Below are positions 17,090 through 40,445 of a stretch of DNA of 64,000 nucleotides, piece after piece (position 1 is the first letter of the stretch; the number at the start of each line of letters is the position of its first letter). The notes below the pieces were generated by a model that saw nothing but the letters and a program-made list of their open reading frames with translations, did no database searches and was not told the origin of the DNA. A program made the position numbers and the translations under genes. The DNA comes from Anaeramoeba ignava BMAN (Eukaryota > Protista > Anaeramoebae), in the NCBI GenBank assembly GCA_028826165.1, contig JAPDFW010000021.1:11645-75644 (forward strand). Direction: 5' to 3'.

Positions 17090-20000
17090 TTAATTTTCTT
17101 TTTTATTTTCTTTTGATTTCCCTTTTAATTTTTGTTTTAATTGATCTGTTGATTGCTTTTGGAATTTGTTTGCTAATTCAATCATTTTTTTAACTTTTTC
17201 TTCTTTTAATTTCAATAATTTCTCTTTTTTTCTTTCAATTTTAATTGATTTGTTTCTAAAATCTTTCAAATTTTGATTTGCTGAAAGAGATAAAAGAAAT
17301 AAGAATTTTTTCCTCATTTTTTCCTTTTGAAATGGTTCATCAGTAATTGGATGATTTTCCAAAAACGAGATTGCCATTGAAAATTCTTTATCAGAAACAT
17401 TTGATTTCTGGGGAAGAATCGATTGAATCATTTTTCTTTGATGAGAAAGAAAATCCATCAAACAATTTGCAAAAACACGAAGAATTGGATTATTTGTTTC
17501 ATGGTCAATCAACATCATTGCAGCATAAGATTCATCAAATGATTTTTTGTCATCAAGTCTTAAAATTGAGGAAATAGAACCGCTACTTGTTCCGACAAAC
17601 TTCTTGACAGCTTCTGTTGCTGAAGAAAAAATTGACATGAAAAACTTGACAAAATCATAAACGGAAAAAACTGTTCTTTCAACCACTTTGTTGTCTCTGA
17701 TGCAGATTTTAGTCATTAATTTCTGCACAATAACCACAAATATAATCTGATATGCAATCGTAATCGCAATGAAAATGGCGACGTATTTGAGGATGTTATA
17801 CAATAAATTTTTTGAAGCAAACCAATAAATTGCTGGGATAATAAACAATATGATGAATGCAATCACCCAAACTACACAAAATGCAATTACTCCGACCCAC
17901 ACTTGCAGATTTGTATATGAAGTTACTTCGATTGGATCTACTTTACTGAATCCTGGGAAAGGCTTCTTTCCTTGTCTTAGCATCATGATTCTCTTCCGAT
18001 ACAAATTGAAAATTGATTTCCAAAGCAAAAGAAGAATAACAAATGCGGCCAATGCTGAAACACCTGAAATAACTGAGAATGCGTTGAGAATCTGATTTGC
18101 TCTTTCTCTTGAAAAGGAGTGAACAAAGCGTGAAAAAGAATTTTCAAGTGGGTTTTTATCAACTGAACACATTTCATCGATTTGTTGGATTAATTGAATT
18201 GCATAAATCGAAATTGATTCTGAATACAAACTCACAAGAGGCTTCCCAGTGAAGCAATTACTTTCTTGGATGTCTCCAATCACTTCCTGTCTCATTAATT
18301 GAAGAGTCAAACACGCGTTTTTGATGATTTTTGTTACAAGTAACACAATTAGTGCTACTAAAACAACCCAAAGCCAAAATGCTGCAAGTAATCTTTGTGG
18401 ATAATAGAAATCATAATATTCCTCATATTCTCTGTGTTCGTTTTTTTTGTTTGAAAATTTTGATTTGATTTTTTTCATCATTTCTTTTATCCATTTCCAA
18501 ATCCAACTCCAAAAAATTGAACATTTGTTTCTTTTTTTATTCTTTTCTTCATCTTTCTCATTTTCATCATCTTCTTCACTTTTTGGTTCTAGTTCTCTTT
18601 TAAATAATAGTGAATTGACAATTCTTTGAGTTTCGAAATTGTTTGTTGATTTTTTGAGTATAAAATTGATTTCTTTTTCTGACAATTCTGAAATTTTTTT
18701 ATTTTTCAAGTTTTCTTTGAATTGTTTTTTTTCAAGAGCTTTTTTTTCCTTTTCGTTTTCATTTTCTGAAACACTTTCCAATTCAATTTCTTGGTTTTGA
18801 TTTTCATTTTCATTTTCATTTTGATTTTGATTTTCATTTTGATTTTCATTTTCATTTTGATTTTCAATAAAATCATCTAAATCAAGATTTTCCAAATCAC
18901 TTGATTCTGAATCAGAAAATTTTTTCACTAATTTTCTTTCAATTTCCAAAAATTTCAAAGATTTCTTGGCTCCAATAGGAAGTATTTTTTTGAGTAAATT
19001 CCAATAACCAGACATTCTTTCATGAGCAAAAAAATGTTTTTCGATCCAAATTTTAAATTTAGGGATTATTCTTGCCAAAATAATCAACAATAAAATCAAA
19101 AGAGCCAAAGAAGAAATAATTGCTTCAAAAACCGACAAAGCAACAAATTGTCTTGATTCTGATCTTTCAGGATTTGCGATCAATTTAGGAAGAAAAGCAA
19201 TTAAAACAGCCATCAAGCCAACAACAATAACAAAAGTGAGGATATTGTGATTTTTGGGAGAATTGAGGAAGAAAGGAAGAACAAGACTAAAACTAACAAC
19301 CCAGAAAATAACAGATTGCTTGAGAGAATCAAGTGCTTTTGTGAATACAAACTTGTCAGGTGAAGAAATCAAGACTGTTTGAAAATCTGACTGAATTCCC
19401 AAAACAGAAAAGGCAATTTGAGCCTTTACTTTTCCTTCTTCATCCAAACACGAAGGAATATTTGAAGAAGAGTCAAATCGGATATTTTGCAAATTTCGAA
19501 TACCGCCAATATCTGTGAATAAATCATCTCCTGAAGCTGAAGCATTTGAGCATTCTGTGATAATCTCAATGGGAAAGGAAATGTTTTTGTGAATTTCTAA
19601 AGTGAAATCAACAGTAATAACTGCAGAGAATTTTTCTCCGATATTCAATTCACTTGGAATGTTTTGCAAATCAGCCTTTACACTTATCACTGGGTTTTCC
19701 ACATAAAAAGAGTCTGATGAGGTATGGATATCGTTGTAAATAAACTGTATTGTGTAGTTTTCGTTTGTCCCTGAATCCATTCTGAGATTGAATACTGCAA
19801 TTCCATTTTCATCAGTTGTTGCTATTGAATTTTTTGGATCGAGTCTTGCGTTGATTGAATTTTGAGACACGATAGCTGCTGTGATGATTTTACCGGGAAC
19901 AGGATACGAAAAGGAAAACAGTTGCACAATACTTGATCCCATATATGCCTTTTTATTAACCATTACTTGGTCTGAAAAAGGAAACGGGAATCCCACTTGG

Positions 20001-23000
20001 CATCCTGATGCTGGTGAACTTAATACAAATAAGTGAGTAGGATCTCTGATTATTTTGATTGATTCTTCGTATTTTTCTCCGTCACATTCAAACTTGATTC
20101 TTATTGTTTCCCACTCTTGTTTTCCAATTGCAACTACGGAAGAGAATGTTGCGATTCCGTTTTCATTTGTTTTTTCAAAACCCATTCCTTCCCACTCTTC
20201 ACTTGATTGGTTATAAACCCAGAAAGTGACATATTTATTCTCAAGAGGAATATTTGTTGATTTTTCTGAAATGAGAACTTTTGGAGATTTCGGGAATTTT
20301 TGGTCTAGCAAAATTTGATAAGGAAGATCGAAAATTTCCAATTTTACATTTTGTTTTGAGATATTAAAGAAAACTCTCTCGTAATCCGAACCAAATCCAC
20401 AATTCTGTACTAAAAAATCCAAAGAAGCATATCCGTCTTTTTTGGCATAGAGTAGTGATAAATCCCAAGTGACTTCTCCATTTTCATCTGAAGGAGCAAT
20501 GCTTTGAACGAAATTGTCATATTGTTCGGAATTAAAATCAATAGGATAAGTCTGGTTGTTATCATTTCCTCCATTTTCATCTATTTGAATGTAACCATAT
20601 AAACCTTGAATTGGATCTCCTGTTGTTGAGTCATTGATTTGGAGTTTTGGTTGATATGTCATTTTTTGATAACCTGAAATAAAAGGCAATGTTGTGTTCC
20701 AAGTCACAGTTAAAGTTATTAACTGAGATGGACTACAAATACTCACCATTACTTTAGAATTTGCAGGAACTCCATTAATAAAAACCATTAGATCAAAAGG
20801 AATATAATCCCCATCTTCATTCTTTGATTGTTTATTGATCACAAAATTTTCAAGAATAAGTTCATCTATTATCAAAATCAATTTTTTTTTTAAATTTTTT
20901 TTAAATTTTATGAAAATTATTAGATATAGTTTATAGTCTCTAACCTTGTTCTGTGATGTTTTCTTTTCCTTGATATAAATTTTGAGTTAAATTTTTGGTT
21001 ATAAAACTTGAATTTTTGCCAAAAATAGTTCCATAGTAATCATTTGTATTAAACCCAAGAACATGAACAGTCATATTAGAATAACTTTGGTGAATATTTT
21101 CTGGGAAAAGCTTGACTTTAATAGATTCATTACCAAAACTAACACCTGGAAGCAAATAATTATCACTATCTGGAGAATAGATAATTTCCACTTTTTCAAT
21201 AGCATTTAACAAGTTGATTTCAAAGCATTCCATCCAATTCCAATAGGTCATATCAGGAATATAACCTTGAGAAACAGAGAAGCAAACTTTACTTCTCATT
21301 GCAATTCCATATATTGTTGTTGAAATGGTTGCTGTTCCGTTTGTGACTTCCCAATATCCTTGTTGAGGAGAAATGGCAAAACCCATTGGAAGATCACAAG
21401 GATCAACAAATATTGTCAAGTTAAAGGTCTCGTTATCCATTGTTATTCCGTTGAAATCTTGGATAAGCAAATTCCAATGTAATTCTACTCCAGATTCAAT
21501 ATTTTCATCCCAATTTGATATGTTGATTCTGGAAACAACTCTTGGATCGAAATCCTCAAAGAAATAAATTGTCACGTTAATTGGATCCGATTGAATATCA
21601 TCGACATCTACAAAGCATGTTTGATTTGAGCCATTTACACTTGGGCCAACACAAGCCCAATCCAAACATAAAAACGCAAATCCATTTTCATCAGTTGTGA
21701 ATTGATGAGGATCAAATGTGAAGTTGTCGCAAATAAAAGTGATTAATTTGTCTGCAATTCCTTTTCTTGTTTCATCTTGGACTTGTATAATTGACCATTT
21801 ATCACTTTCAAGTTGGAAATCACTTGATATTTTGATTTCCTGAATTTTTTCAATCCAAATGATTTCCTTCACTGATGGAACAACTTGAATATCATTAGTT
21901 TCAACAACAAAATCATCGCAAACAAATTTGATTTTAAAAAAGCAATCATTTTTTGTTAATCCTTCAACTGAGAATTTTAAGTTTGAGAAATTCGCTCTAT
22001 TTAAAAGGATGAGTAAATTAATAAATAAAAATAATAATAATAATAAATTTATTATTATTATTATTATTATTTTCTAAAATGTTACATTCCATTTTCATCT
22101 GTCATAACAATCGTATTCAAAAGGTATTTTGAATTTGGAATTGGTTCTTGATTTTCAGAAACTGAATAATTGCATTGTTTGGAAATTTTTGCCACAACTG
22201 GTTTGTTTGCAATTCCGTTTGCAGTAGCATCTTTTACAGAAATTATCCATGGTTCTGCAAATTTTTCTCCTTCTTTAACACTTAAAGATCCATTTTGTTG
22301 AATTAGAACCATAGAAACTGAATATAAATCAAAAATCAAAAAAAAAAAAATTAATTCAATCAATTAATCATTTCTTTTTCTTAAATTCAAATTCAAATTA
22401 AAAAACCATTTGTTTGGAATGAGAGAATAAAATAACCAGGAATTTCAACATAAATAATTTCATCATAAGTTGAAACTTGTATTCCTTCTGCAAAAGCTGT
22501 AAATCTCATTTTTGTTTTTGTTGAACCAAGAAAAGTATAATTGATATTAGACTCAAGATTAAGATCTTCATTTATAGAAACAATCTCTATCCAACCTTTT
22601 AAATTTTGAATTTTGAAATTTTGAATTAAATTTTAAGTTTTGAATTTTAAATTGAATCAAATAAATTCTTGTTACAATAAGATTCATATTCAGGTATATC
22701 CCATGAACGAAAACCTGAAACTAAAGATACTCTAACATTACTCAAATCTGTATAATTTTCAGAACCAATTCCAAAGCTATATCTCAAAAGAATTACATCT
22801 CCATAATTTACAAGTTGATTGTGAATTGAATCATTATTTTGAAGCCATAAATTATTAACTAAAAAGTGGAACAAAAGTGAGAAGAAAAAAAAAATTTTTT
22901 TTTCCTTTTTCTTTTTAAAACAAAAATAAAAATAAAAATAAAAATAAAAAAATACTTTGAGTTTTCAAAGAAAGAGGAAAAGAAATTTGAGAAATTTCTG

Positions 23001-24916
23001 AATTGATATTGTTAAAAAGAGTAGCAGCTAAAATAGGAAAAAAATTAAATTTAAAAAATTTTTTTGAATTGAATTAAATATTAAAATTGATTATTGAATA
23101 TTGAATATTGAATATTGAATATTGAATATTAAATATTGAATTTTGAATTGAATTAAATATTGAATTTTGAATTGAATTAAATATTAAATATTGAATTAAA
23201 TTGAATTAAATATTGAATTAAATATTGAATTAAATTGAATTAAATTGAATTAAATTGAATTGAATTAAATTGAATTGAATTGAATATTAAATATTGAATT
23301 GAATTGAATATTAAATTGAATTGAATTGAATTAAATTGAATTGAATTGAATTGAATTAAATTAAATATTGAATTGAATATTAAATATTAAATATTGAATT
23401 GAATTAAATTAAATATTGAATTAAATATTGAATTAAATATTGAATTAAATTGAATTAAATTGAATTGAATTGAATATTAAATATTGAATTGAATTGAATA
23501 TTAAATATTGAATTGAATTGAATTAAATTGAATATTGAATATTAAATATTGAATTGAATTAAATATTGAATTGAATATTAAATATTGAATTGAATTGAAT
23601 ATTAAATATTGAATTGAATTGAATTGAATATTAAATTGAATTAAATATTGAATTGAATTGAATTGAATTGAATTGAATTGAATGGAATTGAATTGAATTG
23701 AATTAAATTGAATATTGAATTAAATATTAAATATTGAATTGAATTGAATTGAATTGAATATTGAATATTGAATATTAAATATTGAATTTTGAATTGAATT
23801 AAATATTGAATTTTGAATTGAATTGAATTGAATTAAATATTGAATTAAATATTGAATTGAATTAAATTGAATTGAATTAAATATTGAATATTGAATTAAA
23901 TATTGAATTGAATTGAATTGAATTGAATTGAATTGAATTGAATTGAATATTAAATATTGAATTGAATTGAATATTAAATATTGAATTGAATTGAATTAAA
24001 TATTGAATATTGAATTAAATATTGAATTGAATTGAATTAAATATTGAATTGAATTAAATATTGAATTGAATATTGAATATTGAATTGAATTGAATTGAAT
24101 TGAATTAAATATTGAATTAAATATTGAATTGAATTGAATTGAATTGAAAATGTTTTTGAATTAAATTGAATTACAAGGCCCAGAATTATTAAGTTCACTT
24201 TTAAATTCACATTGAGAAAAAAATGTCAATCTAACTGTTTCACTTGAACCTGAAAGAACAGAAATTTGAGAAAATGTTGCTATTCCATCATTATTTGTAT
24301 ATTGGGTTGTATCTCCTGATAATTCAATTCCTGTTTTTAATTTATCTCTCATTTGTAAAAGTGTTAAATCTGTTCCTTCTTCATTTTCTGGTATATCTAA
24401 AGTAGTAGCATTTACAATTACTTTACAATTTGTAATTCCATCTGATTTAAATTTTTTAGAAACTCTCAACTACAATTTTTAAATTAATTTTTATTCGTAA
24501 TTTTTAAATTAATTTTTATTCTTAATTTTAATTAATTTTTATTCTTAATTTTATTGTTACTTTTGCATTAAATGGTTGATGATAATAAACTTCAGTTTCA
24601 TTTGGGAATTGATAAAAACCTAAACTAAAAATTATAAAAAAAAATTTTTTTTAATTAAAAAGGGGAATTAAAACTTAATCAAAAAAAAAACAATAAACAA
24701 ACAATTTACTTACTTTAAACCAATTTTATCTTCATTTATTTCTGTTCCTTCAAGTAAATATCTAATAGCAACTCCAAATGTAAAAATAAAAAAAGTTGAA
24801 AGCATAAAAATTGTTAAAGACCGCCAAATAACATCATCTCCAACAAAATCAATAAATCTTGGCTTTCCAATCCATTTAAAAATTTTTTTAAATAAATTTG
24901 AACAAAATTTTTTCAT
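17090..24916 (-). CDS. STRA6/RBP-receptor-like multi-pass membrane protein with N-terminal signal anchor and large Ig-like repeat ectodomain, paralog 1 (~2,000 aa, ~9 exons)
   Basis: ATG at 24916. Canonical introns at about 24713-24625, 24561-24470, 24174-23028, 22955-22859, 22674-22597, 22438-22318, 22085-21997 and 20944-20866. C-terminal motifs FYYPQRLLAAFW, LYRKRIMMLRQGK, YTNLQVW, ERTVFSVYDFVKFF, DESYAAMMLIDHETNNPILRVF and KKFLFLLSLSANQNLKDFR match the order of STRA6/STRA6L motifs. The ectodomain has repeated T(D/N)xNGxAxF motifs. Confidence 0.8.
23066..24150. repeat. Intronic (ATTGA/ATTAA/ATATTGA)n pentamer-based satellite, ~1.1 kb
   Basis: Visible directly inside intron 3 of paralog 1. 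The homologous intron in paralogs 2 and 3 is only ~130-150 bp. Confidence 0.92.
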
Positions 24917-24999
24917 TTTAATTTTGTTTAAAAAAAGAAAGGAGAGGAAAAATGAAATTTCGAATTTTTTTGAATTTTTATTTTCTTTCTTTTTCTTTT

Positions 25000-25490: not shown

Positions 25491-25496
25491 CTTTGT

Positions 25497-28400
25497 TTAA
25501 TTCACTGAATTGTTTTTTTCAACTAAAGATATATTAAAATCATTATCGAAAATTTTCAAATCTTTATCTTTATTATCATTATCAGAAGATAATTCATCAA
25601 ATCCTAATTCACTACTTTTGGAATCTGAATTTTTTTCTTTTTTAATTTCTTCTTTTTTAGGTTTTTGCATTCTTTCTTCTTTTGGAACCATCATCCAAAT
25701 TTCTTCTTCTTTTTTTTTAAGTGCTTTTTTCTTTCTGTTTTCATTTTGAATAGCAGTTTCTCTTTTTTCTCTTAAACTTTTGTTTGTTGCTAATGTTAAT
25801 AATAAAATAAATCTTCTTCTAAGTTTTTCTCTTCTACTTTCTTCTCCAGTAACAGGATGATGATCAAAATATGAAAGAGTCATTGATATTTCTTCATTTG
25901 TTGCATCAAATGTGTTTTTATGAATTTTTTGTATTTCTTTTCTTAAATGAATTAGATAATTCATCATATAATTCATAAATACTCGAAGAATTGGATTGTT
26001 TGTTTGATGATCAATTTTCATCATTGCTGAATAAGAACTATCCATTGATCCTTCTAAATCAAGTCGGAATAATGAATAATAAACAGAAACACCTGATGCT
26101 CCAATTAATCTTTTAGCTGCATCTGTTGCTGATGAAAATATTGAAATAAAGAATTTGATAAAATCATAAATAGAAAAAACAGTTCGATTTATGATTGTAT
26201 TATCATCAATAAAAAAATTTTTAACAAGTTTTTGAACCAAATAAATGATCACAAATTGATAGAAAATAACAACAAGTATGATAATGAAAATAACGAGAAG
26301 AAATTGAAGTAAAATTGTTTTGTTTAAGAAATAAAGCATTAACCAAATAACTGCTGGAATTATCAAAAGAACAAGGAATGTTAAAAACCAAACAAGAACA
26401 TATGCAATAAGTCCAAGCCAAATTTGAAGATTTGTGAATGATGTTACTTTAGATACATCAGTTTCTTCATATTCGTCAAATGGTGTTTTTCCTTGTCTTA
26501 AAATCATTATTCTTTTTCGATATAATTTGAAAATAGATCTCCATTGAACACACATAATGATAAATGCAAGAAATGATGCAATTCCCATTATTACAGAAAA
26601 TACATTACAAACTTTACTAATTGTATTTGGTGGAATTTGTTGAATAAACTCAGCCCATATACTTCCTAAAGCAGAAATATCTTCATTACATTGTTTATCA
26701 ATACTATTGATAAGTAAAGCTGCACCAATAGATAAAGATGTTGATGGATAATCAGATAATACAGGTTTATTATCAAAGCAATAACTTTGTTGAATTTTTC
26801 CAATTTCTTCTTGTCTATACCATAAAAGTGAAATTCTGAGACTTCTAACCAATTGTGTAATTAATAAAACAAGAATAGCAGACATAATAACCCAAAGCCA
26901 AAATGCAGTAAGTAATCTTTGTGGATAATAAAAATCATAATAAGTTTCATATTGTTCATGTGGATTATCTTCTTTCGCAAATTTTTCTTTGATTTTTTTA
27001 ATAATTTTCTTTAATAAATTAACAAATCCTCTCCAACATCTTTTAAATTTATCTGTTTTCTTTTTTGGTTTTTTTTCTATTGGGATTGTTTTCCCTGCTG
27101 CTTTTGCATCAGATAATCTTTTAAGTTCAAGATTTTTTACAGATCTTCTTAAAATTAATCCAATTTCTTTTTCACTAAGTTCTTCATAATTCTTTTCTTT
27201 AACTGATTTAGAAGTAATTTTTTGATTACTTTTTGAAGAATCTGAATAATTACCTAAAAGAGGATCATCTTCTTGTGCTTCAAGTTCAAATTCTTCAATA
27301 TATCCAACATTATCTTTTGGTTTTTCATCACTATCATCATTATCAGTAGTGGAATCTGAATCAGAAATTTCATCTTCAATAAGTTTTCTTTCCATTTCAA
27401 GAATTTTAAGATGTCTTTTTGCTCCAAGTGGTAATAAACGTTTAAATAAAAGCATATAACTTGATACTCTATCATTTATAAAACTTCGATTTTCAATATA
27501 AAATTTCAATTTTTTGAAAATTTTTGAAACTACTAATAACAAGAATGAAAAGAAGTGCAAAACTAACAAGAACTCCTTCTAAAACTGCAAGAAAAGAATA
27601 TTGCATTGGATATGTCGAATCAGTTTTAGGTATTAATTGTGGAAGAAATGCAATAAGAACTGCTGCAAGAATAAGTGCAACAATATAAGTGAGAATATGA
27701 TGATTTCTTGATGAATTAAGAATAAATGGAATTGCTAATGTAAAACAAATAACCCAAAATATTCCTGATTGGTTAAGAGAATTCTCTGCTGCTTCAAAAT
27801 CAACATTATCAATAGCATCAATAAGAAAATTTTCATATTTTGATTGAATTCCATAAGCAGAAAATGCTATTGAAGCTTTAACTTTACCTTTCTTATCCAA
27901 ACAAGAAGAATCACCAGAAGAAGCATCAAATTGTACTGTAATATCACATTCTCCATTTTCATTAGTGAAAGGAATTGAATTTACAATTGAAACATCACTA
28001 CAATTATAAAGAATTTTAATTGGAACTCTTTTTGATTCTTGACTTCCATCAAAATTAACTTGGATATGAACTGGAAATGGATTTCCAATTCCAATATTAA
28101 ATTTCTTTTTGGGATAACTTGTAGAAACAGATGTAACTGGATTACTAACATAAAATGGATCTGTTTGTGTAATAAGACTATTATAAGAAAATTCAATAGT
28201 ATAATTTCCAGATGATCCTGAATCCATTACAAAATCGAAAATAGCAATTCCATTATTATCTGTTGATGCAACAGATGAATATTCTTCAAGACTTCCATCT
28301 CCATTATTTGAATTGATCATAGCGAAGATGGGGCTATTGGGGATTGGTGTTGATTGGAAATAAAGACCAACAACAGCTGATCCAAGATACGAATCATTTT

Positions 28401-31400
28401 CAAAAAAATAGGGTTTCTGAGGAAGTGGAAATGGAACTCCAATCTTTGCTCCTATTTTAAGTGGATTTGTTAATACTGTTAATAATGTTGGTTCGTTTGT
28501 TACTTGGAAATTTATTATTGAAGAAAATGAATTATCGCAAAAGAAAAAAACATTTGATGTTTCAGTTAATGTAAAATTATAAAAAATAGCTGTTCCATTT
28601 TGATCAGTTATTGCATAACCTATTGTTTCTTCAGTGATACTTTCTGCAAATACGAATTTGTTTGCTTGAGGAACATTTGAACTATCTGTAACATTAACTT
28701 TGGGTGGAACTGTTGGTGTTTGATTGTAGTAAAGTAATGGTGAAAAACCAAAAGTTTTGATTTGATATTGATCAATTTCGAATGAAATATTAAAGTTTTT
28801 CTTTGAAGATTCATCACAAGAATTATTCATTCCAAATATACAAAAAGTAATATTGCATGAAGTATCACTTGCATAAATAAAATTCAATGGAAGTGTTGTA
28901 TATCCTGTTGAATTTGTTGGTGTTTTGCTTTGGATAAGACCAACTTGATTTTGATCTTCATAATCGAAAAGTAATGTGCAATTTCCATCTTCAGATTGTG
29001 CATATATATAATATCCTTTTGCTGATGATCCATCTGAAAAATTTGCTTGTACTAATGCTTGAGGAATAGATTTATTGTTTCCTGATTTTACTATTCCTGG
29101 ATTCCAATCAATAGTTAAAATGAAATCTGTAACTGGTGGAATAACTTGTATTGATATTTCTGAAGATGGAAATCCATTGATGAATATTGCCATATTATAT
29201 GTTCCACAATAATTAATTTGAAATCCTTCTAAATGAACTAAATCTATATTAATATTTTTTTTTAATAATAAAAATAATTTAAATATATTGATTTTGATTT
29301 TGATTTTGATTTTGATTTTGATTTTACTATTAGGCTTATCAACTGGAACTTGAAGTTCATAAAGTATTGTGTTTGTATTATTATTATTATAAACATGATT
29401 TATATCCATTGTTCCATTAAAAACATTTTGATAATCAAATGATTCTGGGAAATAAGATTGTAATAAAATATGGATAGTTACATTATTATTTAAACTTTGA
29501 TTTTCATATAATTCATATTTAATCGTTAAAGTAGAATTGTTCCATGATTTTCCTTTATAAACAACATTACTATACTCAATAACACTTGCTGTTTTAATTG
29601 GATTGTTTAAATCCATTAAATAACATCCTTCACATGTATCAAAATCTCCTGGTTTAAGTCCATTTTTTTTAGCTTGTAAACAAAACATTGTTGTCATTTG
29701 AATTCCAAATATTGGAATTGAAATATTTCCAGTTTCTGAAAGAACTAGTATTAATAATTGAATCATTCAAAAAAACATATCCCATTGGTAATTCTCCTTC
29801 ATCAATATAAGCAGTAAGAGTAAAAGTATCTGATGGATTAGAACTTAAGTTTCCATAAAATTCCAATATTTCAAAACTTATATTCAAAATATCTCCTGAA
29901 TTTACACTTATATTCCAAATTGACATATTAATAGCAGAACAATATTCAGGTGCTTCTGTAAAGTTTAAGGTTAATGTAACATTTATTTCTGAAGTTGTAT
30001 CATCAACTTTTATAATCAATTTGTAAGAGTTATTATTATGTAATGATACCATCCGAGCATATTCAATATCAAATATTCCAAATCCATTTATATCTGTTTG
30101 AACTTCTTGTTGATCCAAAAGTACATCTGGTATATAGAATTCAATATATTTTCCTGGAATTCCTGTTCCATTTTCATTAAGAACTTGTATTATAGGTCTT
30201 GGATTTGCTTCAAGAATATATGTATTAGAAATTGTAATATTTGTTGTATTCTGAAATTTGTAAATGCTTTTTACAGAAGAATTTACGTATATATTATCTG
30301 TTATAATATATATTCCATCTGAAATGAATTTAATTTGGAAAGCACATTGAGATGTAGTGTTTCCATCAACAGAAAATTTTAAATCTGAAAAATTTGCACT
30401 AAAATCAAAAATATTTAAAAAATTTAATTTATATTGAATCAAAAATTAAAATTAAAATTAAAATTTAAATTTAAATTTACAATCCTGAAGAATTTGTAAT
30501 TGCTATTGTATTTAAAAGACTTTTAGAATTGAATAATGGTTTTTGATATTCTGATATATTATAATCACAATTCATTGCTATTTTTGCAAATACTGGTTTT
30601 TCTGCTATTCCTTTTCCTCCACTATCTTCTATTTTGATAATAAATGGATCAGTAAAGTTTTTTCCTTCCTCAACATAATATTTCTCTCCATTTTTAATTT
30701 GTGGATTTGTAATTGTTATTGAAGAAACTAAAATATTTTTTTTTCATTTTTAATTTTTGGTTTTAATTTTAATTTTAATTTTGATTTTGATTTTGATTTT
30801 GATTTTAATTTTAATTTTGATTTTAATTTTAATTTTAATTTTAATTTTAATTTTAATTTTGATTTTGATTTTGATTTTGATTTTGATTTTAATTTTAATT
30901 TTGATTTTAAAATTTACCAGTTGTATTAAATTTCAAATTAAAAGGTGCATCAATTTCTACTCCTTCACAAAATGCTGTGAAAAGTATATCTCTTGATGTT
31001 GATCCTGAAACATTAAAGTAAACAGTTGTGATATTATTATTATAAGGATCAATTTGGTCAGGATTTTGAGTATTAAAATAAGCTATTAATTAAAATTAAT
31101 TTACATTATTTTAAATGAATATTTATTTATCAAGAATTATTAATATAAATATTATTATTACCAAAAGCTTCATATTCTGGATATGACCAATTTCTAACAA
31201 CTGATGGAATAATTTTAACATCTCTTGGATCTGAACTCGAAGAATTAGCAACAAATGTAATATTATTTAGTGTAAAATAATCCAATATAGAATCAACTTC
31301 AGATTGATTATAAAGACTTAATGAATCAACTAAAATACAAATTAAAAATATTTTTATCAATTTTTAATTTTAATTTTAATTTTAATTTTTAATTTTAATT

Positions 31401-32683
31401 TTAATTTTAATTTTAATTTTAATTTTAATTTTAATTTTAATTTTGATTTTAATTTTGATTTTAATTTTAATTTTAATTTTAATTTTAATTTTAATTTTAA
31501 TTTTAATTTTGATTTTAATTTTGATTTTAATTTTAATTTTGATTTTTAAATTTAATTTTGATTTTAATTTTGATTTTAATTTTAATTTTGATTTTAATTT
31601 TGAATGAAAATACCATCAGTATCAACAAAAAGTGGATAAGAAGTATTTGCAGTTTTGCTTTTGGGTGGTTTAACTAGGTATTTCGGTAAAAAAATCAATT
31701 CTATTACATCATAAATGAATCCAAATCAATAATAAATTAAAATAAATAATCATTTGATTAATTAAATAATTAAATAATTGATTAAATAATTGATTAAATA
31801 AATAAATAAATAATTAAATAATTGATTAATTAAATATTTGATTAATTAAATACCAGGTCCACTTCGAGTTAATTCACTTCCATATTCACAAACAACAGAA
31901 AAAATGAGACTAATTGTATCAGAAGGTCCATAAATAACTTGAATATTATCAAAAGTAGCAATTCCATCATTATCAGATGTTGCAGTTAAATTTCCATAAA
32001 GTTGGATTTGTGATTGTACTGAACTAATTTCTCCAAGTAATGTTAAATCAGTTTTTCCAAGTTTTAAATCTTCAAATGATGATGCTGATGCTGTTATTGT
32101 GCAATTAGCCATTCCATCTGATTTGAATTTTTTGGATACTCTTAACTATTTTATTTTTTAAAATTTTTATTTTTGGATTATTTTTCATTTTAAATTATTT
32201 TGATTGGAAATTTTACTTGTGAAGTAAAGGGTTCATAAAAGGAAACTTCATTATAATCTGGGAAATTATAAAAGTCCAAACTAAAAGAAATAATTTTAAT
32301 TTTAATTTTAAATTTAATTTTAAATTTGATTTTGATTTTAATTTTGATTTTAATTTTAATTTTGATTTTTAATTTTAAATGTGGGCATTGTTTAAAGAAT
32401 AAATTAAGGTTGAAATATCCAAAAAAAAGTGGAAAAAAAAAAAATATTCCAAAAAAAAATAAAATTAAAAAAAAACAAACTTAATATCAATATCTTGTTC
32501 ATTAATATTAACTCCTTTAAGTAAATATCTAACAGCCATTCCAAAAAAAAACAAAATAAAAGTAGCTAAAGCAATAATAGTAAAAAATCTCCAAGTAACA
32601 TCATCTCCAACAAAATCTAATAAACGAGGATTTCCAATCCAATTTGAGCATCGTTTTGAACAACTTGAACATCTTTTTTTCAT
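25497..32683 (-). CDS. STRA6-like Ig-repeat membrane protein, paralog 2 (two apparent frameshifts at ~27533 and ~29740)
   Basis: ATG at 32683 (MKKRCSSCSKRCSNWIGNPRLLDFVGDDVTWRFF). The exon structure matches paralog 1 and the ORF pieces are collinear with paralog 3. Motifs: FYYPQRLLTAFW, MDSSYSAMMKIDHQTNNPILRVF, LRRRFILLLTLATNKSLR. Comparison with paralog 3 shows net +1 indels at both breaks. Confidence 0.8.
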
Positions 32684-32909: not shown

Positions 32910-35900
32910 TTAATTTACTGAATTGTTTTTTTCAACTAAAGGTGTTTTAAGATCATTTTTGAAAATTTTTAAATCTTTATCTTTATTATCATTATCAGAA
33001 GATAATTCATCAAATCCTAATTCACTACTTTTGGAATCTGAATTTTTTTCTTTTTTAATTTCTTCTTTTTTAGGTTTTTGCATTCTTTCTTCTTTTGAAA
33101 TCATCATCCAAATTTTTTCTTCTTTTTTTTTAAGTGCTTTTTTCTTTCGTTTTGTTTTTCTAATAATAATTCCTCTTTTTCTTAAACTTTTGTTTGTTGC
33201 TAATGTTAATAATAAAATAAATCTTCTTCTAAGTTTTTCTTTTCTACTTTCTTCTCCAGTAACAGGATGATGATCAAAATATGAAAGAGTCATTGATATT
33301 TCTTCATTTGTTATATCAAATGTGTTTTTATGAATTTTTTGTATTTCTTTTCTTAAATGAATTAGATAATTCATCATATAATTCATAAATACTCGAAGAA
33401 TTGGATTGTTTGTTTGATGATCAATTTTCATCATTGCTGAATAAGAACTATCCATTGATCCTTCTAAATCAAGTCGGAATAATGAATAGGAAACAGAAAC
33501 ACCTGATGCTCCAATTAATCTTTTAGCTGCATCTGTTGCTGATGAAAATATTGAAATAAAGAATTTGATAAAATCATAAATAGAAAAAACAGTTCGATTC
33601 ATAATTGTGTTATCATCAATAAAATAAGTTTTAACAAGTTTTTGAACCAAATAAATGATCACAAATTGATAGAAAATAACAACAAGTATGATAATGAAAA
33701 TAACGAGAAGAATACGAAGTAAAATTGCTTTGGTTAAGAAATAAAGCATTAACCAAATAACTGCTGGAATTACCAAAAGAACAAAGAATGTTACAAGCCA
33801 AGCAAGAACATATGCAATAAGTCCAAGCCAAATTTGAAGATTTGTAAATGATGTTACTTCAGATACATCAGTTTCTTCATATTCTTCAAATGGTGTTTTT
33901 CCTTGTCTTAAAATCATTATTCTTTTTCGATATAATTTGAAAATAGATCTCCATTGAACACACATAATAATAAATGCAAGAAATGATGCAATTCCCATTA
34001 TTACAGAAAATGCATTACAAACTTTACTAATCATATCTGGTGGAATTTTCTTAATAAACTCAGCCCATATATTCCCCAAAGCAGAAATATCTTCATTACA
34101 TTGTTTATCAATACTTTTGATAAGTAAAGCTGCACCAGCAGATAAAGATGTTGGTGGATAATCAGATAATACAGGTTTATTATCAAAACAATTACTTTGT
34201 TGAATTTTTCCAATTTCTTCTTGTCTATACCATAATATAGAAAGTGTAATACTTCTGAATAATTGTGTAATTAATAAAACAAGAATAGCAGACATAATAA
34301 CCCAAAGCCAAAATGCAGTAAGTAATCTTTGTGGATAATAAAAATCATAATAAGTTTCATATTGTTCATGTGGATTATCTTCTTTCGCAAATTTTTCTTT
34401 GATTTTTTTAATAATTTTCTTTAATAAATTAACAAATCCTCTCCAACATCTTTTAAATTTATCTGTTTTCTTTTTTGGTTTTTTTTCTATTGGGATTGTT
34501 TTCCCTGCTGCTTTTGCATCAGATAATCTTTTAAGTTCAAGATTTTTTACAGATCTTCTTAAAATTAATCCAATTTCTCTTTCAGTAAGTTCTTCATAAC
34601 TTTTTTCTTTAACTGATTTAGAAGTAATTTTTTGATTACTTTTTGAAGAATCTGAATCGTTATCTAAAAGAGGATCATCTCCTTGTGCTTCAAGTTCAAA
34701 TTCTTCAATATATCCAACATTATCTTTTGGTTTTTCATCACTATCATCATTATCAGTAGTGGAATCTGAATCAGAAATTTCATCTTCAATAAGTTTTCTT
34801 TCCATTTCAAGAATTTTAAGATGTCTTTTTGCTCCAAGTGGTAATAAACGTTTGAATAAAAGCATATAACTTGATACTCTATCATTTATAAAACTTCGAT
34901 TTTCAATATAAAATTTCAATTTTTTGAAAATTTTTGAAACTACAATAACAAGAATGAAAAGAAGTGCAAAACTAACAAGAACTCCTTCTAAAACTGCAAG
35001 AAAAACATATTGCATTGGATATGTTGAATCAGTTTTGGGTATTAATTGTGGAAGAAATGCAATAAGAACTGCTGCAAGAATAAGTGCAACAATATAAGTG
35101 AGAATATGATGATTTCTTGATGAATTAAGAATAAATGGAATTGCTAATGTAAAACAAATAACCCAAAATATTCCTGATTGGTTAAGAGAATCTTTTGCTG
35201 CTTCTAAATCAACATTATCAATAGCATCAATAAGAAAATTTTCATATTTTGATTGAATTCCATAAGCAGAAAATGCTATTGAAGCTTTAACTTTATCTTT
35301 CTCATCCAAACAAGAAGAATCACCAGAAGAAGCATCAAATTGTACTGTAATATCACATTCTCCATTTTCATTAGTGAAAGGAATTGAATTTACAATTGAA
35401 GCATCACTACATTGTGAAAGAATTTGAATTGGAACTCTTTTTGATTTTTGACTTCCATCAAAATTAACTTGGATATGAACTGGAAACTGTCTTCCAATTC
35501 CAATATTAAATTTCTTTTTGGGATAATTTGTAGAAACAGATGTAACTGGATTACTAACATAAAATGGATCTGTTTCACTACGAAGATCGTTATAAGAAAA
35601 TTCAATAGTATAATTTCCAGATGATCCTGAATCCATTATAAAATCGAAAACAGCAATTCCATTATTATCTGTTAATGCAACAGATGAATATTCTTCAAGA
35701 CTTCCATCTCCATTATTTGAATTGATCATAGCGAAGATGGGTCTTTTGGGGATTGGTGTTGATTGGAAATAAAGACCAACAACAGCTGATCCAAGATACG
35801 GATCTTTTTGGAAAAAACAGGGTACATGAGGAAGTGGAAATGGAATTCCAATCTTTGCTCCTGTTTCAAGTGGATTTGTTAATACTGTTAATAATGTTGG

Positions 35901-38900
35901 TTCACGTGTTACTTGGAAATTTATTATTGAAGAATATGATTTATCGCAAACAAAAAGAACATCTGTTTCTTCAGTTAATCTAAAATTATTAAAAATAGCT
36001 GTTCCATTTTGATCAGTTATTGCATAATCTATCAAAACTTTATAAATAGACATTGCAAACACGGATTTGTTTCCTTGAGGAACATTTGAACTATCTGTAA
36101 CAGAAACTTTGGGTGGAATTGGTGGTGTTTGGTTGTAGTAAAGTAAGTGATCAATATCAAAACTTTCGATTTGATATTGATCAATTTCGAATGAAATATT
36201 AAAGTTTTTCTTTGAAGATTCATCACAAGAATTATTCATTCCAAATATACAAAAAGTAATATTGCATGAAGTATTATTTGCAAACAGAAAATTCAATGGA
36301 AGTGGTGTATATCCTGTTGAATTTAGTGGTGTTTTGCTTTGGATAAGACCAACTTGTTCCAGATCGTCATAATCGAAAAGTAATGTGCAATCATCATCTT
36401 CAGATTGTGCATATATATAATATCCTTTTGCTAATGATCCATCTGAAAAATTTGCTTGTACTAATGCTGAAGGAATAGATTTATTGTATCCTGATTTTAC
36501 TATTCCTGGATTCCAATCAATAGTTAAAATGAAATCTGTAACTGGTGGAATAACTTGTATTGATATTTCTGAAGATGGAAATCCATTGATGAATATTGCC
36601 ATATTATATGTTCCACAATAATTAATTTGAAATCCTTCTAAATGAACTAAATCTATATTAATATTTTTTTTTAATAATAAAAATAATTTAAATATTTTGA
36701 TTTTGATTTTGATTTTGATTTTGATTTTGATTTTGATTTTACTACTATTATTATCAACTGGAACTTGAAATTCATAAAGTATTGTGCTTGTATTATAAAC
36801 AATATTTATATCCATTGTTCCATTAAAAACATTTTGATAATCAAATGATTCTGGGAAATAAGATTGTAATAAAATATGGATAGTTACAGTATTATTTAAA
36901 CTTTGATTTTCATATAATTCATATTCAATCGTTAAAGTAGAATTGTTCCATGATTCTCCTTTATGAATAGTTTTATTATACTCAATAACACTTGCTGTTT
37001 TAATTGGATTGTTTAAATCCATTAAATAACATCCTTCACATGTATCAAAATCTCCTGGTTTAAGTCCATTTTTTTTAGCTTGTAAACAAAACATTGTTGT
37101 CATTTGAATTCCAAATATTGGAATTGAAATATTTCCAGTTTCTGGAAAATTATTATTAATAATTGAATCATTCAAAATAACATATCCCATTGGTAATTCT
37201 CCTTCATCAATATAAGCAGTAAGAGTAAAAGTATCTGATGAATTAGAACTTAAGTTTCCATAAAATTCCAATATTTCAAAACTTATATTCAAAATATCTC
37301 CTGAATTTACACTTATATTCCAATTTGTAATATTAATAGCAGAACAATATTCAGGTGCTTCTGTAAAGTTTAAAATTAATGTAACATTAGGCATTGTTAT
37401 ATTTTGATCATCAACTTTTATAATCAAATCATAAGTTCCATTTAATGATGACATCCAAGCATATTCAATATCAAATATTCCAAATCCATTTATATCTGTT
37501 TGAACTGCTTGTTGATCCCAAAATACTTCTCCAAAATGAAATTCAATATATTTTCCTGGAATTCCTGTTCCATTTTCATTAAGAACTTGTATTAGAGGTC
37601 TTGGATTTGCTTCAAGAATATATGTATTAGAAATTGTAATATTTTTTACAATATCAACTGGAATAATTTGTTTTACACTTGAATTTACGTATATATTATC
37701 TGTTATAATATATATTCCATCTGAAGTAAATTCAATTTGGAAAGCACATTGAGAATTAGTTTTTCCATCAACAGAAAATTTTAAATCAGAAAAATTTGCA
37801 CTAAAATCAAAAATATTTAAAAAATTTAATTTATATTGAATCAAAAATTAAAATTAAAATTAAAATTAAAATTAAAATTTAAAATTTAAATTTACAATCC
37901 TGAAGAATTTGTAATTGCTATTGTATTTAAAAGACTTTTAGAATTGAATAATGGTTTTTGGTATTCTGATATATTATAATCACAATTCATTGCTATTTTT
38001 GCAAATACTGGTTTTTCTGCTATTCCTTTTCCTCCACTATCTTCTATTTTGATAATAAATGGATCAGTAAAATTTTTTCCTTCTTCAACATAATATTTCT
38101 CTCCATTTTTAATTTGTGGATTTGTAATTGTTATTGAAGAAACTAAAATATTTTTTTTCATTTTTAATTTTGATTTTAATTTTAATTTTAATTTTAATTT
38201 TAATTTTGATTTTAAAATTTACCAGTTGTATTAAATTTCAAATTAAAAGGTGCATCAATTTCTACTCCTTCACAAAATGCTGTGAAAAGTATATCTCTTG
38301 TTGTTGATCCTGAAACATTAAAGTAAATAGTCGTAAAATTATCATCATCCACATTGAGAATAGGGTATTGAGTATTAAAATAAGCTATTAATTAAAATTA
38401 ATTTACATTATTTTAAATGAATATTTATTTATCAAGAATTATTAATATAAATATTATTATTACCAAAAGCTTCATATTCTGGATATGACCAATTTCTAAC
38501 AACTGATGGAATAATTTTAACATCTCTTAAATCTGGATTCGAAGAATTAACAACAAATGTAATATTATTTAGTGTAAAATAATCCAATATAGAATCAACT
38601 TCAGATTGATTATAAAGACTTAATAATTCAACTAAAATACAAATTAAAAATATTTTTATCAATTTTTAATTTTAATTTTAATTTTAATTTTGATTTTTAA
38701 TTTTAATTTTAATTTTGATTTTAATTTTGAATGAAAATACCATCAGTATCAACAAAAAGTGGATAAGAAGTAATTGCAGTTTTGTTATCGAGTGGAGTAA
38801 TTAATGATTTAGCTAAAAATAAATTAAATAAAATAAAATAATTGATTAAATAAATAATTGATTAAATAAATAATTGATTAAATAAATAATTGATTAAATA

Positions 38901-40445
38901 ATTGATTAATTAATTAAATATTTGATTAATTAAATATTTGATTAATTAAATACCAGGTCCAGTTGGGCTTAATTCACTTTCAGATTCACAAACAACAGAA
39001 AAAATAAGTCTAATTGTATCAGAAGGTCCATAAATAACTTGAATATTATCAAAAGTAGCAATTCCATCATTATCAGATGTTGCAGTTAAATTTCCATAAA
39101 GTTGGATTTGTGATTGTACTGAACTAATTTCTTCAAGTAATGTTAAATCAGTTTTTCCAAGCATTTTTACATCTTCAAATGATGCTCCTGATGCTGTTAT
39201 TGTGCAGTTATCCATTCCATCTGATTTGAATTTTTTGGATACTCTTAACTATTTTATTATTTTAAAATTTTATTTTTGGATTATTTTTCATTTTAAATTA
39301 TTTTGATTGGAAATTTTACTTCTGAAGTAAAGGGTTGATAAAAGGAAACATTATTCGATTTTGGGAAATTATAAAAGTCCAATCTAAAAGAAATGATTTT
39401 AAATTTTAATTTTAAATTTGATTTTAATTTTGATTTATTTTAAATTTGATTTTAATTTTGATTTTAAATTTTAATTTAATTTTGATTTTAATTTTAATTT
39501 TAAATTTTAATTTTAATTTGAATTTTAAATTTGATCTTAAATTTGGAATTTGAATTAAGTTTTAAATTAAAAATTGAATTAAAAATAGGGAAAATTTCAT
39601 TTATAACATGAATTTAGAATAAAAAAGAATAAATTAAAATTGAAATATTCAAATAAAAAAATTTTTTTTTTTTAAATTAAGAATAAATAAGTAAAAAATA
39701 AAAAATTAAAAACAAATGTTAAATCAGTTTTTTTGTTCATTTTTATCAGCTCTTCAAATGATGATCTAACAGCCATTCCAAAAACAGTTATCCATTCCAT
39801 CTGATTTGAATTTTGGATATTTAACTATTTTATTTTTAAAATTTTATTTTTGGGATTATTTTTCATTTTAAATTATTTTTTTGAAAATTGAACATCTTTT
39901 AAATTTTGATAAACAAAATTCATTATTCGATTTTGAAATTAAAAAGTCCAATCTAAAAAAAGAAAAATTTTTAATTTTTGTTTTTGATTTTGAATTTTTT
40001 GAAATTTGATTTTAATTTTAATTTTGATTTTAAATTTAATTTTAATTTTAAATTTGAAGAAAATTTTGATTTTGATTTTAAAAAGAAAGAAAATTTTAAA
40101 GAAAATTTGAATTTGACTTTTTAAAATAAATTTTGGATTTTTAAATTAATTTTAAATTAAAAATTGAATTAAAAATAAAAATTTCATTTATAACATGAAT
40201 TTAGAATAAAAAGAATAAATTAAAATTGAAATATTTAAAATAAATTTTTTTAATTTTAAGAATAAACTTTTTAAAAATAAAAATTAAAAACAAACCAATA
40301 TCAAATTATTCAAGTAAATATCTAACAGCCATTCCAAAAACATAATAAATAATAAATATAAATAAATTAAAAATTAATTAACATCATCTCCAACAAAATT
40401 TTTTGAAATAAATTTAAATTCTTTTTGAAAATTGAACATCTTTTT
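32910..40445 (-). CDS. STRA6-like Ig-repeat membrane protein, paralog 3 (intact from exon 2; exon 1 garbled)
   Basis: The 1644-aa ORF 32910..37844 plus upstream exons (37892-38150, 38222-38385, 38460-38630, 38741-38812, 38953-39248, 39320-39383) are near-identical to paralog 2. Exon 1 survives only as corrupted fragments at ~39720-39786 and ~40300-40445. Confidence 0.78.

What the first reader, a model, noticed from the sequence alone, without database searches (positions are those of the whole stretch)
17090..40445. Tandem family of giant STRA6-like receptors/transporters carrying invasin-like Ig ectodomains
Seen: three head-to-tail genes with the same exon structure encode ~2,000-aa proteins. 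The layout is a short basic N-terminus, one TM anchor, ~1,100-1,200 aa of beta-rich, NxS/T-rich modules with a recurring T(D/N)xNGxAxF motif (~8 copies), three TMs, an acidic cytosolic loop, and then a multi-TM core. Established: the core motifs (FYYPQRL; YRKRIMxLRQGK; xSF/YTNLQ; NRTVFSIYDFIKFF; RLD...DxSYxAMMxIDHxTNNPILRVF; RRRFILLLTLATNxSLR) follow the order of the STRA6/STRA6L RBP-receptor family (FxFPxR; YRKxxxxLxxG; GYQIAY; NRRAFxxFxYFxFF; RxD...DxGF/YxxxxGMLxxDHxHxNPVxxxF; RxRWxLxxTLxxNPxL). Animal STRA6 is ~670 aa, imports retinol from RBP4 and has no such ectodomain. TDxNGxA is typical of bacterial Ig-like (Big_1, invasin/intimin) and related transthyretin-like folds. Inference: this is a STRA6-type lipid conduit fused to its own long capture or adhesion arm, tethered to the membrane at both ends. 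The TM count (1+3) places the STRA6 TM6-equivalent with the expected cytosolic start. If the organism is an anaerobe that cannot make sterols, it could scavenge sterols, hopanoids or other lipids from prey or symbionts. I do not know of a described system with this architecture.
Basis: partly seen in the sequence, partly recalled or inferred. Interest (0 to 1): 0.92.

Follow-up and report, generated by a model that had tools for sequence, protein, structure and literature searches.

The report
Protist STRA6-like receptors with Ig arms
Three neighbouring genes of the anaerobic amoeba Anaeramoeba ignava encode about 2,000-residue membrane proteins that join a long chain of Ig-like domains to a true relative of STRA6, the animal vitamin-A receptor, which shows that this supposedly animal-only protein belongs to an old and widespread protist family of unknown function.

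Summary
The window is Anaeramoeba ignava contig C23 and carries three head-to-tail minus-strand paralogs with the same nine-exon plan. The C-terminal membrane core is homologous to STRA6. Pfam RBP_receptor scores above its cut-off. A family profile hits zebrafish STRA6 (5SY1) at E 1e-27 to 7e-30 over residues 259-634, including the calmodulin-binding BP2 helix. The AF2 model matches 5SY1 at Z 11, with the next match at 5.3. The ectodomain folds as about 12 Ig-like sandwiches of MG4/Big_1 type and is rich in N-glycosylation sequons.

The architecture is not special to this locus. A. ignava has about 25 loci. Full-length relatives occur in A. flamelloides, Pelomyxa, Luapelamoeba, Stygiella, Bodo, Cantina and a bicosoecid. 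Short forms without the Ig array occur in Physarum, Cavostelium and Balamuthia.

In this assembly copy 2 has two +1 frameshifts and copy 3 lacks an intact anchor exon. A transcript does join an anchor exon to a copy-3-like body and core. Aerobes also carry the family, so anaerobe sterol scavenging is unsupported. Lipid conduction is inference only. The scan also flagged another paralog on another contig of this genome. I found no paper describing this family.

The parts
17090..24916 (-). Paralog g1. It looks intact: anchor exon 24716-24916, upstream ectodomain exons, and large ORFs 20940-21872 and 17090-20881.
   Evidence: core at 17132-18460 is 48% identical to g3
25497..32683 (-). Paralog g2 (deposited as M0811_14340, 1324 aa). 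It has an anchor exon (32483-32683), the ectodomain, three TMs and a core ORF, but two +1 frameshifts relative to g3.
29742..29742 (-). First extra base in g2 relative to g3, inside the ectodomain.
   Evidence: the read contigs covering this site are g3-type, so it has no independent check
27534..27534 (-). Second extra base in g2, just after the third TM. It separates the core ORF 25497-27569 from the rest.
   Evidence: in run X1 about 118 of 309 depth keeps the extra base
32910..39382 (-). Paralog g3 (M0811_14341, 1937 aa), exons 2-9: 39382-39320, 39248-38954, 38812-38741, 38631-38464, 38384-38223, 38142-37896, 37800-36743, 36652-32910.
36653..36742 (-). 90-nt in-frame, stop-free intron of g3 (GTAAAA..ATATAG). 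It is read through in the 1644-aa ORF.
   Evidence: absent from P0001 and from the transcript ORF P0061
35178..39382 (-). g3 ectodomain exons: about 12 Ig-like beta-sandwich domains, sequon-rich.
   Evidence: AF2 mean pLDDT 76, all-beta; Foldseek matches to Ig/MG arrays; Pfam MG4/Big_1; sequons
34938..35177 (-). g3 three transmembrane helices after the ectodomain (ORF aa 890-969).
   Evidence: hydropathy; conserved in all long and short relatives
34398..34937 (-). g3 cytosolic acidic/lysine-rich loop, ending in a basic amphipathic helix before the FYYPQRL motif.
33045..34397 (-). g3 STRA6-homologous core (ORF aa 1150-1600): equivalents of TM6-TM9, the intramembrane hairpin and the cytosolic helices.
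   Evidence: Pfam PF14752 38.5 bits against cut-off 25; 5sy1_A E 1e-27; Z 11.0; Atlas score 0.93
33180..33230 (-). g3 helix RRRFILLLTLATNKSLR, which aligns with the STRA6 calmodulin-binding peptide BP2.
   Evidence: 5k8q_B matched at E 0.12 (A1 profile) and E 2.3e-4 (A4 profile)
39400..40445 (-). Degraded remnants upstream of g3: an exon-1-like piece at 40294-40439, an exon-2-like piece near 39951, and a chimeric exon-1/exon-3-like piece at 39710-39800.

Best explanation
Shown: these are three tandem paralogs of a large A. ignava gene family (about 25 loci) that belongs to a widespread protist branch of the STRA6/RBP-receptor family. Each protein has:
- a cytosolic basic N-terminus with a conserved (F/L)D(F/L)VxDxVxxR motif;
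- a type-II anchor helix;
- about 12 glycosylated Ig-like (Big_1/MG-type) domains outside the cytosol;
- three further TM helices;
- a cytosolic loop;
- a core homologous to STRA6 from the FxFPxR motif through TM6-TM9, the intramembrane hairpin and the calmodulin-binding BP2 helix.

Inferred: the protein sits in the plasma membrane (or a phagosome/symbiosome membrane continuous with it), probably as a calmodulin-bound dimer like STRA6. The Ig arm binds an external ligand, such as a bacterial surface or a carrier protein. The STRA6-like cleft passes a small hydrophobic molecule between that ligand and the bilayer, without an energy input. The excess of amino-acid changes in the ectodomain between the two young copies points to diversification of ligand specificity.
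For: - Identity of the core: Pfam PF14752 above its cut-off for g2 and g3 and for the Pelomyxa, Cantina and Bodo relatives.
- Family profiles hit 5sy1_A at E 1e-27 and 6.8e-30 over STRA6 259-634.
- The AF2 model matches 5sy1_A at Z 11.0 over 256 residues; the next match is Z 5.3. Foldseek also ranks 5sy1_A first.
- ESM Atlas neighbours of the core are STRA6 clusters.
- The BP2 calmodulin-binding peptide is matched on its own at E 2.3e-4.
- Ectodomain: all-beta model with pLDDT 76; Ig/MG-array matches; MG4 in 9 and Big_1 in 8 of 14 relatives; the profile hits bacterial adhesin/invasin giants.
- Exposure outside the cytosol: 49 sequons against 17.6 expected.
- One mRNA: transcript ORF P0061 runs from the anchor to the core with the same exon junctions as P0001. 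Complete 2027-aa and 1913-aa transcript ORFs exist for other paralogs.
- Diversification: dN/dS is 1.82 in the ectodomain (binomial p 0.004) against 0.69 in the rest.
- Family size.
Against: - There is no functional, localisation or ligand data.
- The part of STRA6 that is conserved is the dimer/cleft/calmodulin part. The RBP-binding loop is not conserved, and no match was found for the N-terminal five-helix domain.
- The TM-core model has low confidence (pLDDT 59), and no dimer was modelled.
- Outside the ectodomain, dN/dS between g2 and g3 is near 0.7-0.9, and both copies are damaged in this assembly. Part of the divergence may therefore be relaxed constraint.
- One divergent patch, the TM6-TM7 loop, has high dS (0.22), which looks like gene conversion rather than selection.
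Confidence: 0.4

Rival explanations
1. Adhesion or phagocytic recognition receptor. The Ig arm binds prey or symbiont surfaces, and the STRA6-like core acts only as a calmodulin/Ca2+-linked signalling or scaffolding module. No small molecule is conducted.
For: - The Ig/Big_1-type arrays resemble bacterial adhesins and invasins.
- The family is greatly expanded in a bacterivorous, symbiont-bearing amoeba.
- dN/dS exceeds 1 in the ectodomain.
- The BP2-like helix is conserved.
- From my own knowledge, animal STRA6 has also been reported to signal.
Against: - The most conserved part across supergroups is the membrane cleft region, TM6 to the intramembrane hairpin. A pure scaffold role would not obviously require this.
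- Short forms without any Ig arm keep the core.
Confidence: 0.3
2. Endomembrane protein whose Ig array faces the ER or nuclear-envelope lumen, in the manner of NUP210, rather than a cell-surface receptor.
For: - The best Foldseek matches of the ectodomain are human and Dictyostelium NUP210 chains.
- Sequon enrichment only shows exposure to a secretory-pathway lumen.
Against: - The matches are generic to long Ig arrays, with TM-scores of about 0.1.
- About 25 fast-diverging paralogs with dN/dS above 1 in the ectodomain are not expected of a structural luminal protein.
- The STRA6 core is a plasma-membrane protein in animals (my own knowledge).
Confidence: 0.1
3. One reading: an adaptation of anaerobes that cannot make sterols, used to scavenge sterols or hopanoids from prey or symbionts.
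For: Several carriers are anaerobes: Anaeramoeba, Pelomyxa, Stygiella and Cantina.
Against: - Full-length forms also occur in Bodo saltans, Luapelamoeba hula and a bicosoecid. Short forms occur in Physarum, Cavostelium and Balamuthia. These are aerobes to my knowledge.
- The core tree groups sequences broadly by organism (an Anaeramoeba clade and amoebozoan clades) rather than by lifestyle.
Confidence: 0.07
4. For g2 and g3 only: decaying duplicates with no present function. g2 is frameshifted twice and g3 has lost its anchor exon.
For: - Frameshifts at 29742 and 27534.
- Degraded exon 1 upstream of g3.
- A compensated frameshift in g3 at 33148-33161.
- Core dN/dS of about 0.9 outside the TM6-TM7 loop.
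- Other broken family loci on C30, C64 and C96.
Against: - A transcript about 99% identical to g3 has an intact anchor exon and an open frame through the core. An intact allele or an assembly fault therefore exists.
- The three TMs and the loop show dN/dS of 0.3-0.5.
- The g2 indels could not be checked independently.
Confidence: 0.13

Closest known systems
STRA6 / STRA6L (RBPR2), the animal retinol-binding-protein receptors (Pfam PF14752; structure 5SY1)
   Same: - Homologous from the FxFPxR motif before TM6 through TM7-TM9, the intramembrane hairpin, the RLD...DxGY...H/NNP segment and the calmodulin-binding BP2 helix.
- Same inferred topology for this half.
- Fold match at Z 11.
   Different: - About three times longer.
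- The N-terminal part has 1+3 helices instead of five, with no detectable similarity.
- About 1,200 aa of Ig-like domains sit in the first extracellular loop.
- A long acidic cytosolic loop is present.
- The RBP-binding loop is not conserved.
- The organisms are not known to have RBP4 (my own knowledge).
Short protist STRA6-like proteins (Physarum 594 aa, Cavostelium 615 aa, Balamuthia 913 aa)
   Same: - Same N-terminal motif and anchor helix, three TMs, the RLLPxG motif and the core.
- Their profile hits 5SY1 at E 6.8e-30.
   Different: They have only a short serine/threonine-rich first loop where the window's proteins carry the Ig array.
Bacterial Big_1 / invasin-intimin adhesins and alpha-2-macroglobulin MG domains
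   Same: - Repeated about 100-aa beta-sandwich modules with the TDxNGxAxF strand motif.
- Pfam Big_1 and MG4 hits in relatives down to E 4.5e-10 and 7.8e-10.
- The ectodomain profile hits bacterial adhesin/invasin giants at E 3e-93.
- Foldseek matches to A2M-family arrays.
   Different: - No outer-membrane barrel, LysM or C-type-lectin tip as in invasin/intimin.
- No thioester or bait region as in A2M.
- The window's own proteins stay below the Pfam cut-offs.
NUP210 (gp210), a transmembrane nucleoporin with a luminal Ig-like array
   Same: A long string of Ig-like domains on a membrane anchor, and the top Foldseek rows.
   Different: - NUP210 has a single C-terminal TM and no STRA6 core.
- The match is of the generic array kind, with TM-score about 0.1.

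Membership tests
STRA6 / RBP_receptor (PF14752) | Pfam PF14752 score above the gathering cut-off (25 bits) | tested here: met
   g3 ORF scores 38.5 bits and g2 core ORF 43.3 bits. The g1 ORF gave no Pfam hit at E<=1 but is 48% identical to g3 in the core. Relatives score 36.8-49.7 bits.
STRA6 / RBP_receptor (PF14752) | Sequence and fold homology to the solved STRA6 central domain (TM6-TM9, intramembrane hairpin, cytosolic helices) | tested here: met
   5sy1_A at E 1e-27 and E 6.8e-30 over residues 259-634. VIA-align Z 11.0, rmsd 5.2, 256 aa, with the next match at Z 5.3. Foldseek rank 1 at E 7e-3.
STRA6 / RBP_receptor (PF14752) | Calmodulin-binding helices (BP2) | tested here: inconclusive
   The BP2 peptide 5k8q_B is matched at E 2.3e-4 by the short-form profile and at E 0.12 by the long-form profile. 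Actual binding cannot be tested here.
STRA6 / RBP_receptor (PF14752) | N-terminal five-helix domain (TM1-TM5) with an extracellular N-terminus | tested here: not met
   Hydropathy gives 1+3 helices and a basic cytosolic N-terminus. Profile searches find no similarity to STRA6 residues 1-258, and the Atlas search of the N-terminal part finds nothing. Distant homology is not excluded.
STRA6 / RBP_receptor (PF14752) | Binding of holo-RBP4 through the TM6-TM7 extracellular loop and transport of retinol | not testable with these tools
   The loop is variable among relatives and between g2 and g3. There is no assay.
STRA6 / RBP_receptor (PF14752) | Homodimer with an outward lipophilic cleft | not tested
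Big_1 (PF02369) / invasin-intimin adhesins | Big_1 Ig-like domains recognised by Pfam | tested here: inconclusive
   Big_1 is found in 8 of 14 family ectodomains (best E 4.5e-10), but not in the window's own protein, whose best hit is MG4 at 20.7-22.7 bits against a cut-off of 24.7.
Big_1 (PF02369) / invasin-intimin adhesins | Outer-membrane beta-barrel anchor and C-terminal lectin-like tip | tested here: not met
   No such domains appear in the Pfam scans. The anchors are alpha-helical TMs.
Alpha-2-macroglobulin / complement family | Thioester domain, bait region and receptor-binding domain next to the MG domains | tested here: not met
   Only MG4, MG2 and bMG3-type partial hits are found. 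There are no thioester or A2M receptor domains.

The most novel reading that the evidence does not exclude
This architecture is the ancestral state of the STRA6 family. On this reading, early phagotrophic eukaryotes used a calmodulin-bound lipid conduit with an Ig-like capture arm to take hydrophobic molecules directly from bound bacteria or carrier proteins. Animal STRA6 is then a stripped-down descendant that later specialised on RBP4 and retinol. In Anaeramoeba the expanded, fast-diverging family would mediate recognition of, and lipid or isoprenoid exchange with, prey or the sulfate-reducing symbionts of the symbiosome.
Probability: 0.2. Interest if true: 0.9.

Novelty: new variant of a known kind. 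Interest (0 to 1): 0.72.

Why it matters
Reviews state that STRA6 arose 'from scratch' (PMC3546623) and call it animal-specific (PMC5977736). This locus and its relatives show that the dimer/cleft/calmodulin half of STRA6 is shared with proteins of metamonads, discobids, amoebozoans and stramenopiles, usually carrying a giant Ig-like arm.

This makes the origin and primitive function of STRA6 directly testable. It also gives protist cell biology a candidate surface-receptor family. In a symbiont-bearing anaerobic amoeba that family has about 25 copies, and the ectodomains of two young copies show an excess of amino-acid changes.

Tried and rejected
- Single-sequence phmmer of the core against PDB found nothing. 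Only profiles reach STRA6.
- A profile of the ectodomain against PDB sequences found nothing.
- The third word-indexed protein search, with the short-form alignment, returned only the query. Animal STRA6 sequences were therefore never obtained, and no tree including animals could be made.
- Read laying: all runs were contigs. Those showing a missing base at 27534 and 29742 carry g3-type letters at 35 of 40 listed positions, so they are the g3 copy laid on g2 and do not test the frameshifts. No RNA run was recognised, and no joints were seen.
- The 270-aa macro-domain tail of transcript ORF P0061 maps to contig C88 and is a transcript-assembly chimera, not part of the gene.
- Gene transfer among anaerobes was considered. 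The quick tree groups sequences by organism instead. Deep nodes are unresolved and the careful tree search was not finished.
- The Atlas search of the N-terminal 290 aa of a short form gave no hit.
- I did not send any self-joined spliced model to a search or fold tool. Spliced sequences were used only as database proteins returned by the tools (P0001, P0061, P0068). Full-length joined models of g1 and g2 were therefore neither searched nor folded.
Full report
**Source and gene layout.** The window is very AT-rich, with exons at about 25-31% GC and spacers down to 7%. It is G000 contig C23, bases 11645-75644. A protein search identified the organism as Anaeramoeba ignava: the deposited protein M0811_14341 (P0001, 1937 aa) is 100% identical to the long ORF at 32910-37844. 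Three paralogs lie head to tail on the minus strand:
- g1 at 17090-24916
- g2 at 25497-32683
- g3 at 32910-39382

g2 and g3 are 94% identical in DNA over 5.4 kb, and g1 is about 75% identical to them in its conserved stretches.

**Exon structure.** I rebuilt g3's exons 2-9 against P0001 inside a script. All seven introns are GT..AG and 71-141 nt long. One of them, the 90-nt intron at 36653-36742, is in frame and free of stops, which explains the apparent 1644-aa ORF. The homologous exon blocks occur in the same order in g2 and g1. The neighbouring genes are ordinary eukaryotic ones: a neurobeachin-like BEACH protein, a FYVE protein and beta'-COP.

**State of the three copies.**
- g2 has two net +1 insertions relative to g3, at about 29742 and 27534. 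All other indels are multiples of three or are compensated. Its deposited protein (P0068, M0811_14340, 1324 aa) ends at the second shift, after the third TM helix.
- g3 has no intact anchor exon. Upstream lie only degraded exon-1, exon-2 and exon-3-like remnants at 39400-40445. No other place in the genome holds the matching exon.
- A transcriptome-derived ORF of A. ignava (P0061) is about 99% identical to g3. It carries an intact anchor exon, the same exon junctions as P0001, and an open frame through the core. Its last 270 residues or so, a macro domain, map to contig C88 and are an assembly chimera.
- An intact g3-like allele therefore exists, or the assembly is faulty here.

The public read data could not settle the g2 shifts. 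The contigs that lack the extra bases carry g3-type letters at 35 of 40 listed positions. In run X1 about 118 of 309 depth at 27534 keeps the extra base.

**The core is a STRA6 homolog.**
- Pfam RBP_receptor (PF14752) scores 38.5 bits (g3) and 43.3 bits (g2) against a cut-off of 25, covering profile positions 321-603 of 605.
- Single-sequence phmmer against PDB finds nothing.
- A profile of 18 family members (A1) hits zebrafish STRA6, 5sy1_A, at E 1e-27.
- A profile of 12 short protist relatives (A4) hits it at E 6.8e-30 in one alignment over STRA6 residues 259-634.
- The last of these motifs is the calmodulin-binding peptide BP2. The isolated peptide chain 5k8q_B is matched at E 2.3e-4.
- An AF2 model of g3 ORF residues 880-1600 has mean pLDDT 59, with the core at 60-83. 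Its only outstanding structural match is 5sy1_A: Foldseek E 7e-3 with the next hit at 0.87, and VIA-align Z 11.0, rmsd 5.2, 256 residues, with the next match at Z 5.3.
- The nearest ESM Atlas clusters to the core are all STRA6/RBP_receptor (score 0.93).

The N-terminal part has one helix plus three, not five. It shows no similarity to STRA6 residues 1-258.

**The ectodomain.** An AF2 model of P0001 residues 1-1190 has mean pLDDT 76 and pTM 0.67. It is all-beta and falls into about 12 sandwich domains. Foldseek matches long Ig-like arrays: NUP210 of human and Dictyostelium, central-apparatus proteins, bacterial and human alpha-2-macroglobulins, and GhpA. All have TM-scores near 0.1, so the resemblance is of the generic array kind. 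Pfam finds MG4 in 9 and Big_1 in 8 of 14 family ectodomains, with best E-values of 7.8e-10 and 4.5e-10. The window's own protein stays just under the MG4 cut-off. A full-length family profile also hits bacterial adhesin/invasin giants at E 3e-93. N-glycosylation sequons number 49 in the ectodomain against 17.6 +/- 3.6 in shuffles, and 0.7 per 100 aa in the cytosolic parts. This fits the inferred topology of N-terminus inside, Ig array outside, three helices back in, and a cytosolic loop, with the TM6 equivalent then starting in the cytosol as in STRA6.

**Distribution.** An exhaustive HMMER search with the g3 core found 41 representatives at E<=1e-3. By name, the full-length forms (1,680-2,720 aa) come from:
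- A. ignava and A. flamelloides
- Pelomyxa schiedti
- Stygiella incarcerata
- Luapelamoeba hula
- Cantina marsupialis
- a bicosoecid
- Bodo saltans

These are, and all share the N-terminal motif, the anchor, the Ig array, three TMs, the loop and the core. Short forms of 594-913 aa in Physarum, Cavostelium and Balamuthia keep the same 1+3+core frame with only a short first loop. The A. ignava genome holds at least 18 anchor exons and about 25 core loci, several of them broken. A quick maximum-likelihood tree places all Anaeramoeba sequences together. In it g2 and g3 are sisters, and g1 sits inside an A. ignava-specific expansion. The amoebozoan long forms group together, as do the short forms. 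Deep nodes are unresolved and the tree has no animal sequences. This pattern fits old vertical descent better than transfer among anaerobes.

**Evolution of the young pair.** Differences between g2 and g3 are patchy, as two other first-stage notes also reported. By the Nei-Gojobori method:

| Region | dN/dS | Notes |
|---|---|---|
| Ectodomain | 1.82 | 150 nonsynonymous and 22 synonymous changes; binomial p 0.004 against neutrality |
| All other parts except the TM6-TM7 loop | 0.69 | |
| Three TMs | 0.32 | |
| Cytosolic loop | 0.46 | |

The ectodomain differs from the rest at Fisher p 0.003. The TM6-TM7 loop patch has high dS (0.22), which points to gene conversion. The core outside that loop is near 0.9, so relaxed constraint on a decaying copy contributes as well.

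**Interpretation.** What these genes encode is well supported: a protist branch of the STRA6 family with an Ig-like array in the first extracellular loop. How the proteins work is inference. The conserved half of STRA6 is the one that, in the solved structure, forms the dimer interface, the lipophilic outward cleft and the calmodulin grip (my own knowledge of 5SY1). The most economical model is therefore a calmodulin-bound dimeric conduit for a small hydrophobic molecule, with a ligand-capturing arm. I give this about 0.4. An adhesion or phagocytic receptor that uses the core only for signalling comes next, at about 0.3. The anaerobe sterol-scavenging idea is weakened because aerobes carry the family.

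**Novelty.** Full-text searches for STRA6 with Dictyostelium, protist or unicellular, and for PF14752 and RBP_receptor, found no description of such proteins. The Anaeramoeba symbiosome paper does not mention them. Reviews call STRA6 animal-specific or made 'from scratch'. The Pfam tag is, however, already attached to these database entries.

**Procedural note.** No self-joined spliced model was sent to any search or fold tool. Spliced sequences were used only as proteins returned by the tools.

Noticed in passing
window 39400-40445: AT-rich stretch upstream of g3 with degraded copies of exon 1 (40294-40439), exon 2 (near 39951) and a chimeric exon-1/exon-3 piece (39710-39800). It looks like the remnant of a partial duplication or of a fourth copy.
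   Followed up: partly
window 23085-24172: About 1 kb of (TTGAA)n / 24-nt tandem repeat fills g1's third intron. It makes this intron far longer than in g2 and g3. The small exon 4 was not found in g1 by tblastn.
   Followed up: partly
window 33148-33161 (g3) versus 25736-25748 (g2): g3 has a compensated -1/+1 frameshift just after the BP2-like helix. It replaces about 10 residues that in g2, g1 and other paralogs follow the family pattern (LREKR..AI..E.RK).
   Followed up: partly
window 34014-34313 (g3) / 26600-26900 (g2): The extracellular TM6-TM7 loop is a divergent patch between g2 and g3 with high synonymous divergence (dS 0.22 against about 0.03 elsewhere). This suggests gene conversion from another paralog.
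   Followed up: partly
window 8457-17062 (+): A large neurobeachin-like gene (Neurobeachin solenoid, DUF4704, PH_BEACH, BEACH, WD40) converges on g1. Its last ORF ends at 17062, only 28 bp from the end of g1's ORF at 17090.
   Followed up: partly
protein P0061 residues about 1985-2271; genome contig C88:120327-121799: The EukProt transcript ORF joins the g3-like message to a macro-domain gene from another contig, through a lysine/glutamate-rich low-complexity stretch. It is a transcript-assembly chimera.
   Followed up: yes
window 54513-59522 (-): A 1669-aa ORF with no Pfam family at E<=0.001.
   Followed up: no
window introns, e.g. 37801-37895, 38143-38222, 38632-38740: Many introns of these genes consist largely of AAAATT/AAATTT-type hexamer microsatellites between canonical GTAAA..TAG ends.
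   Followed up: no
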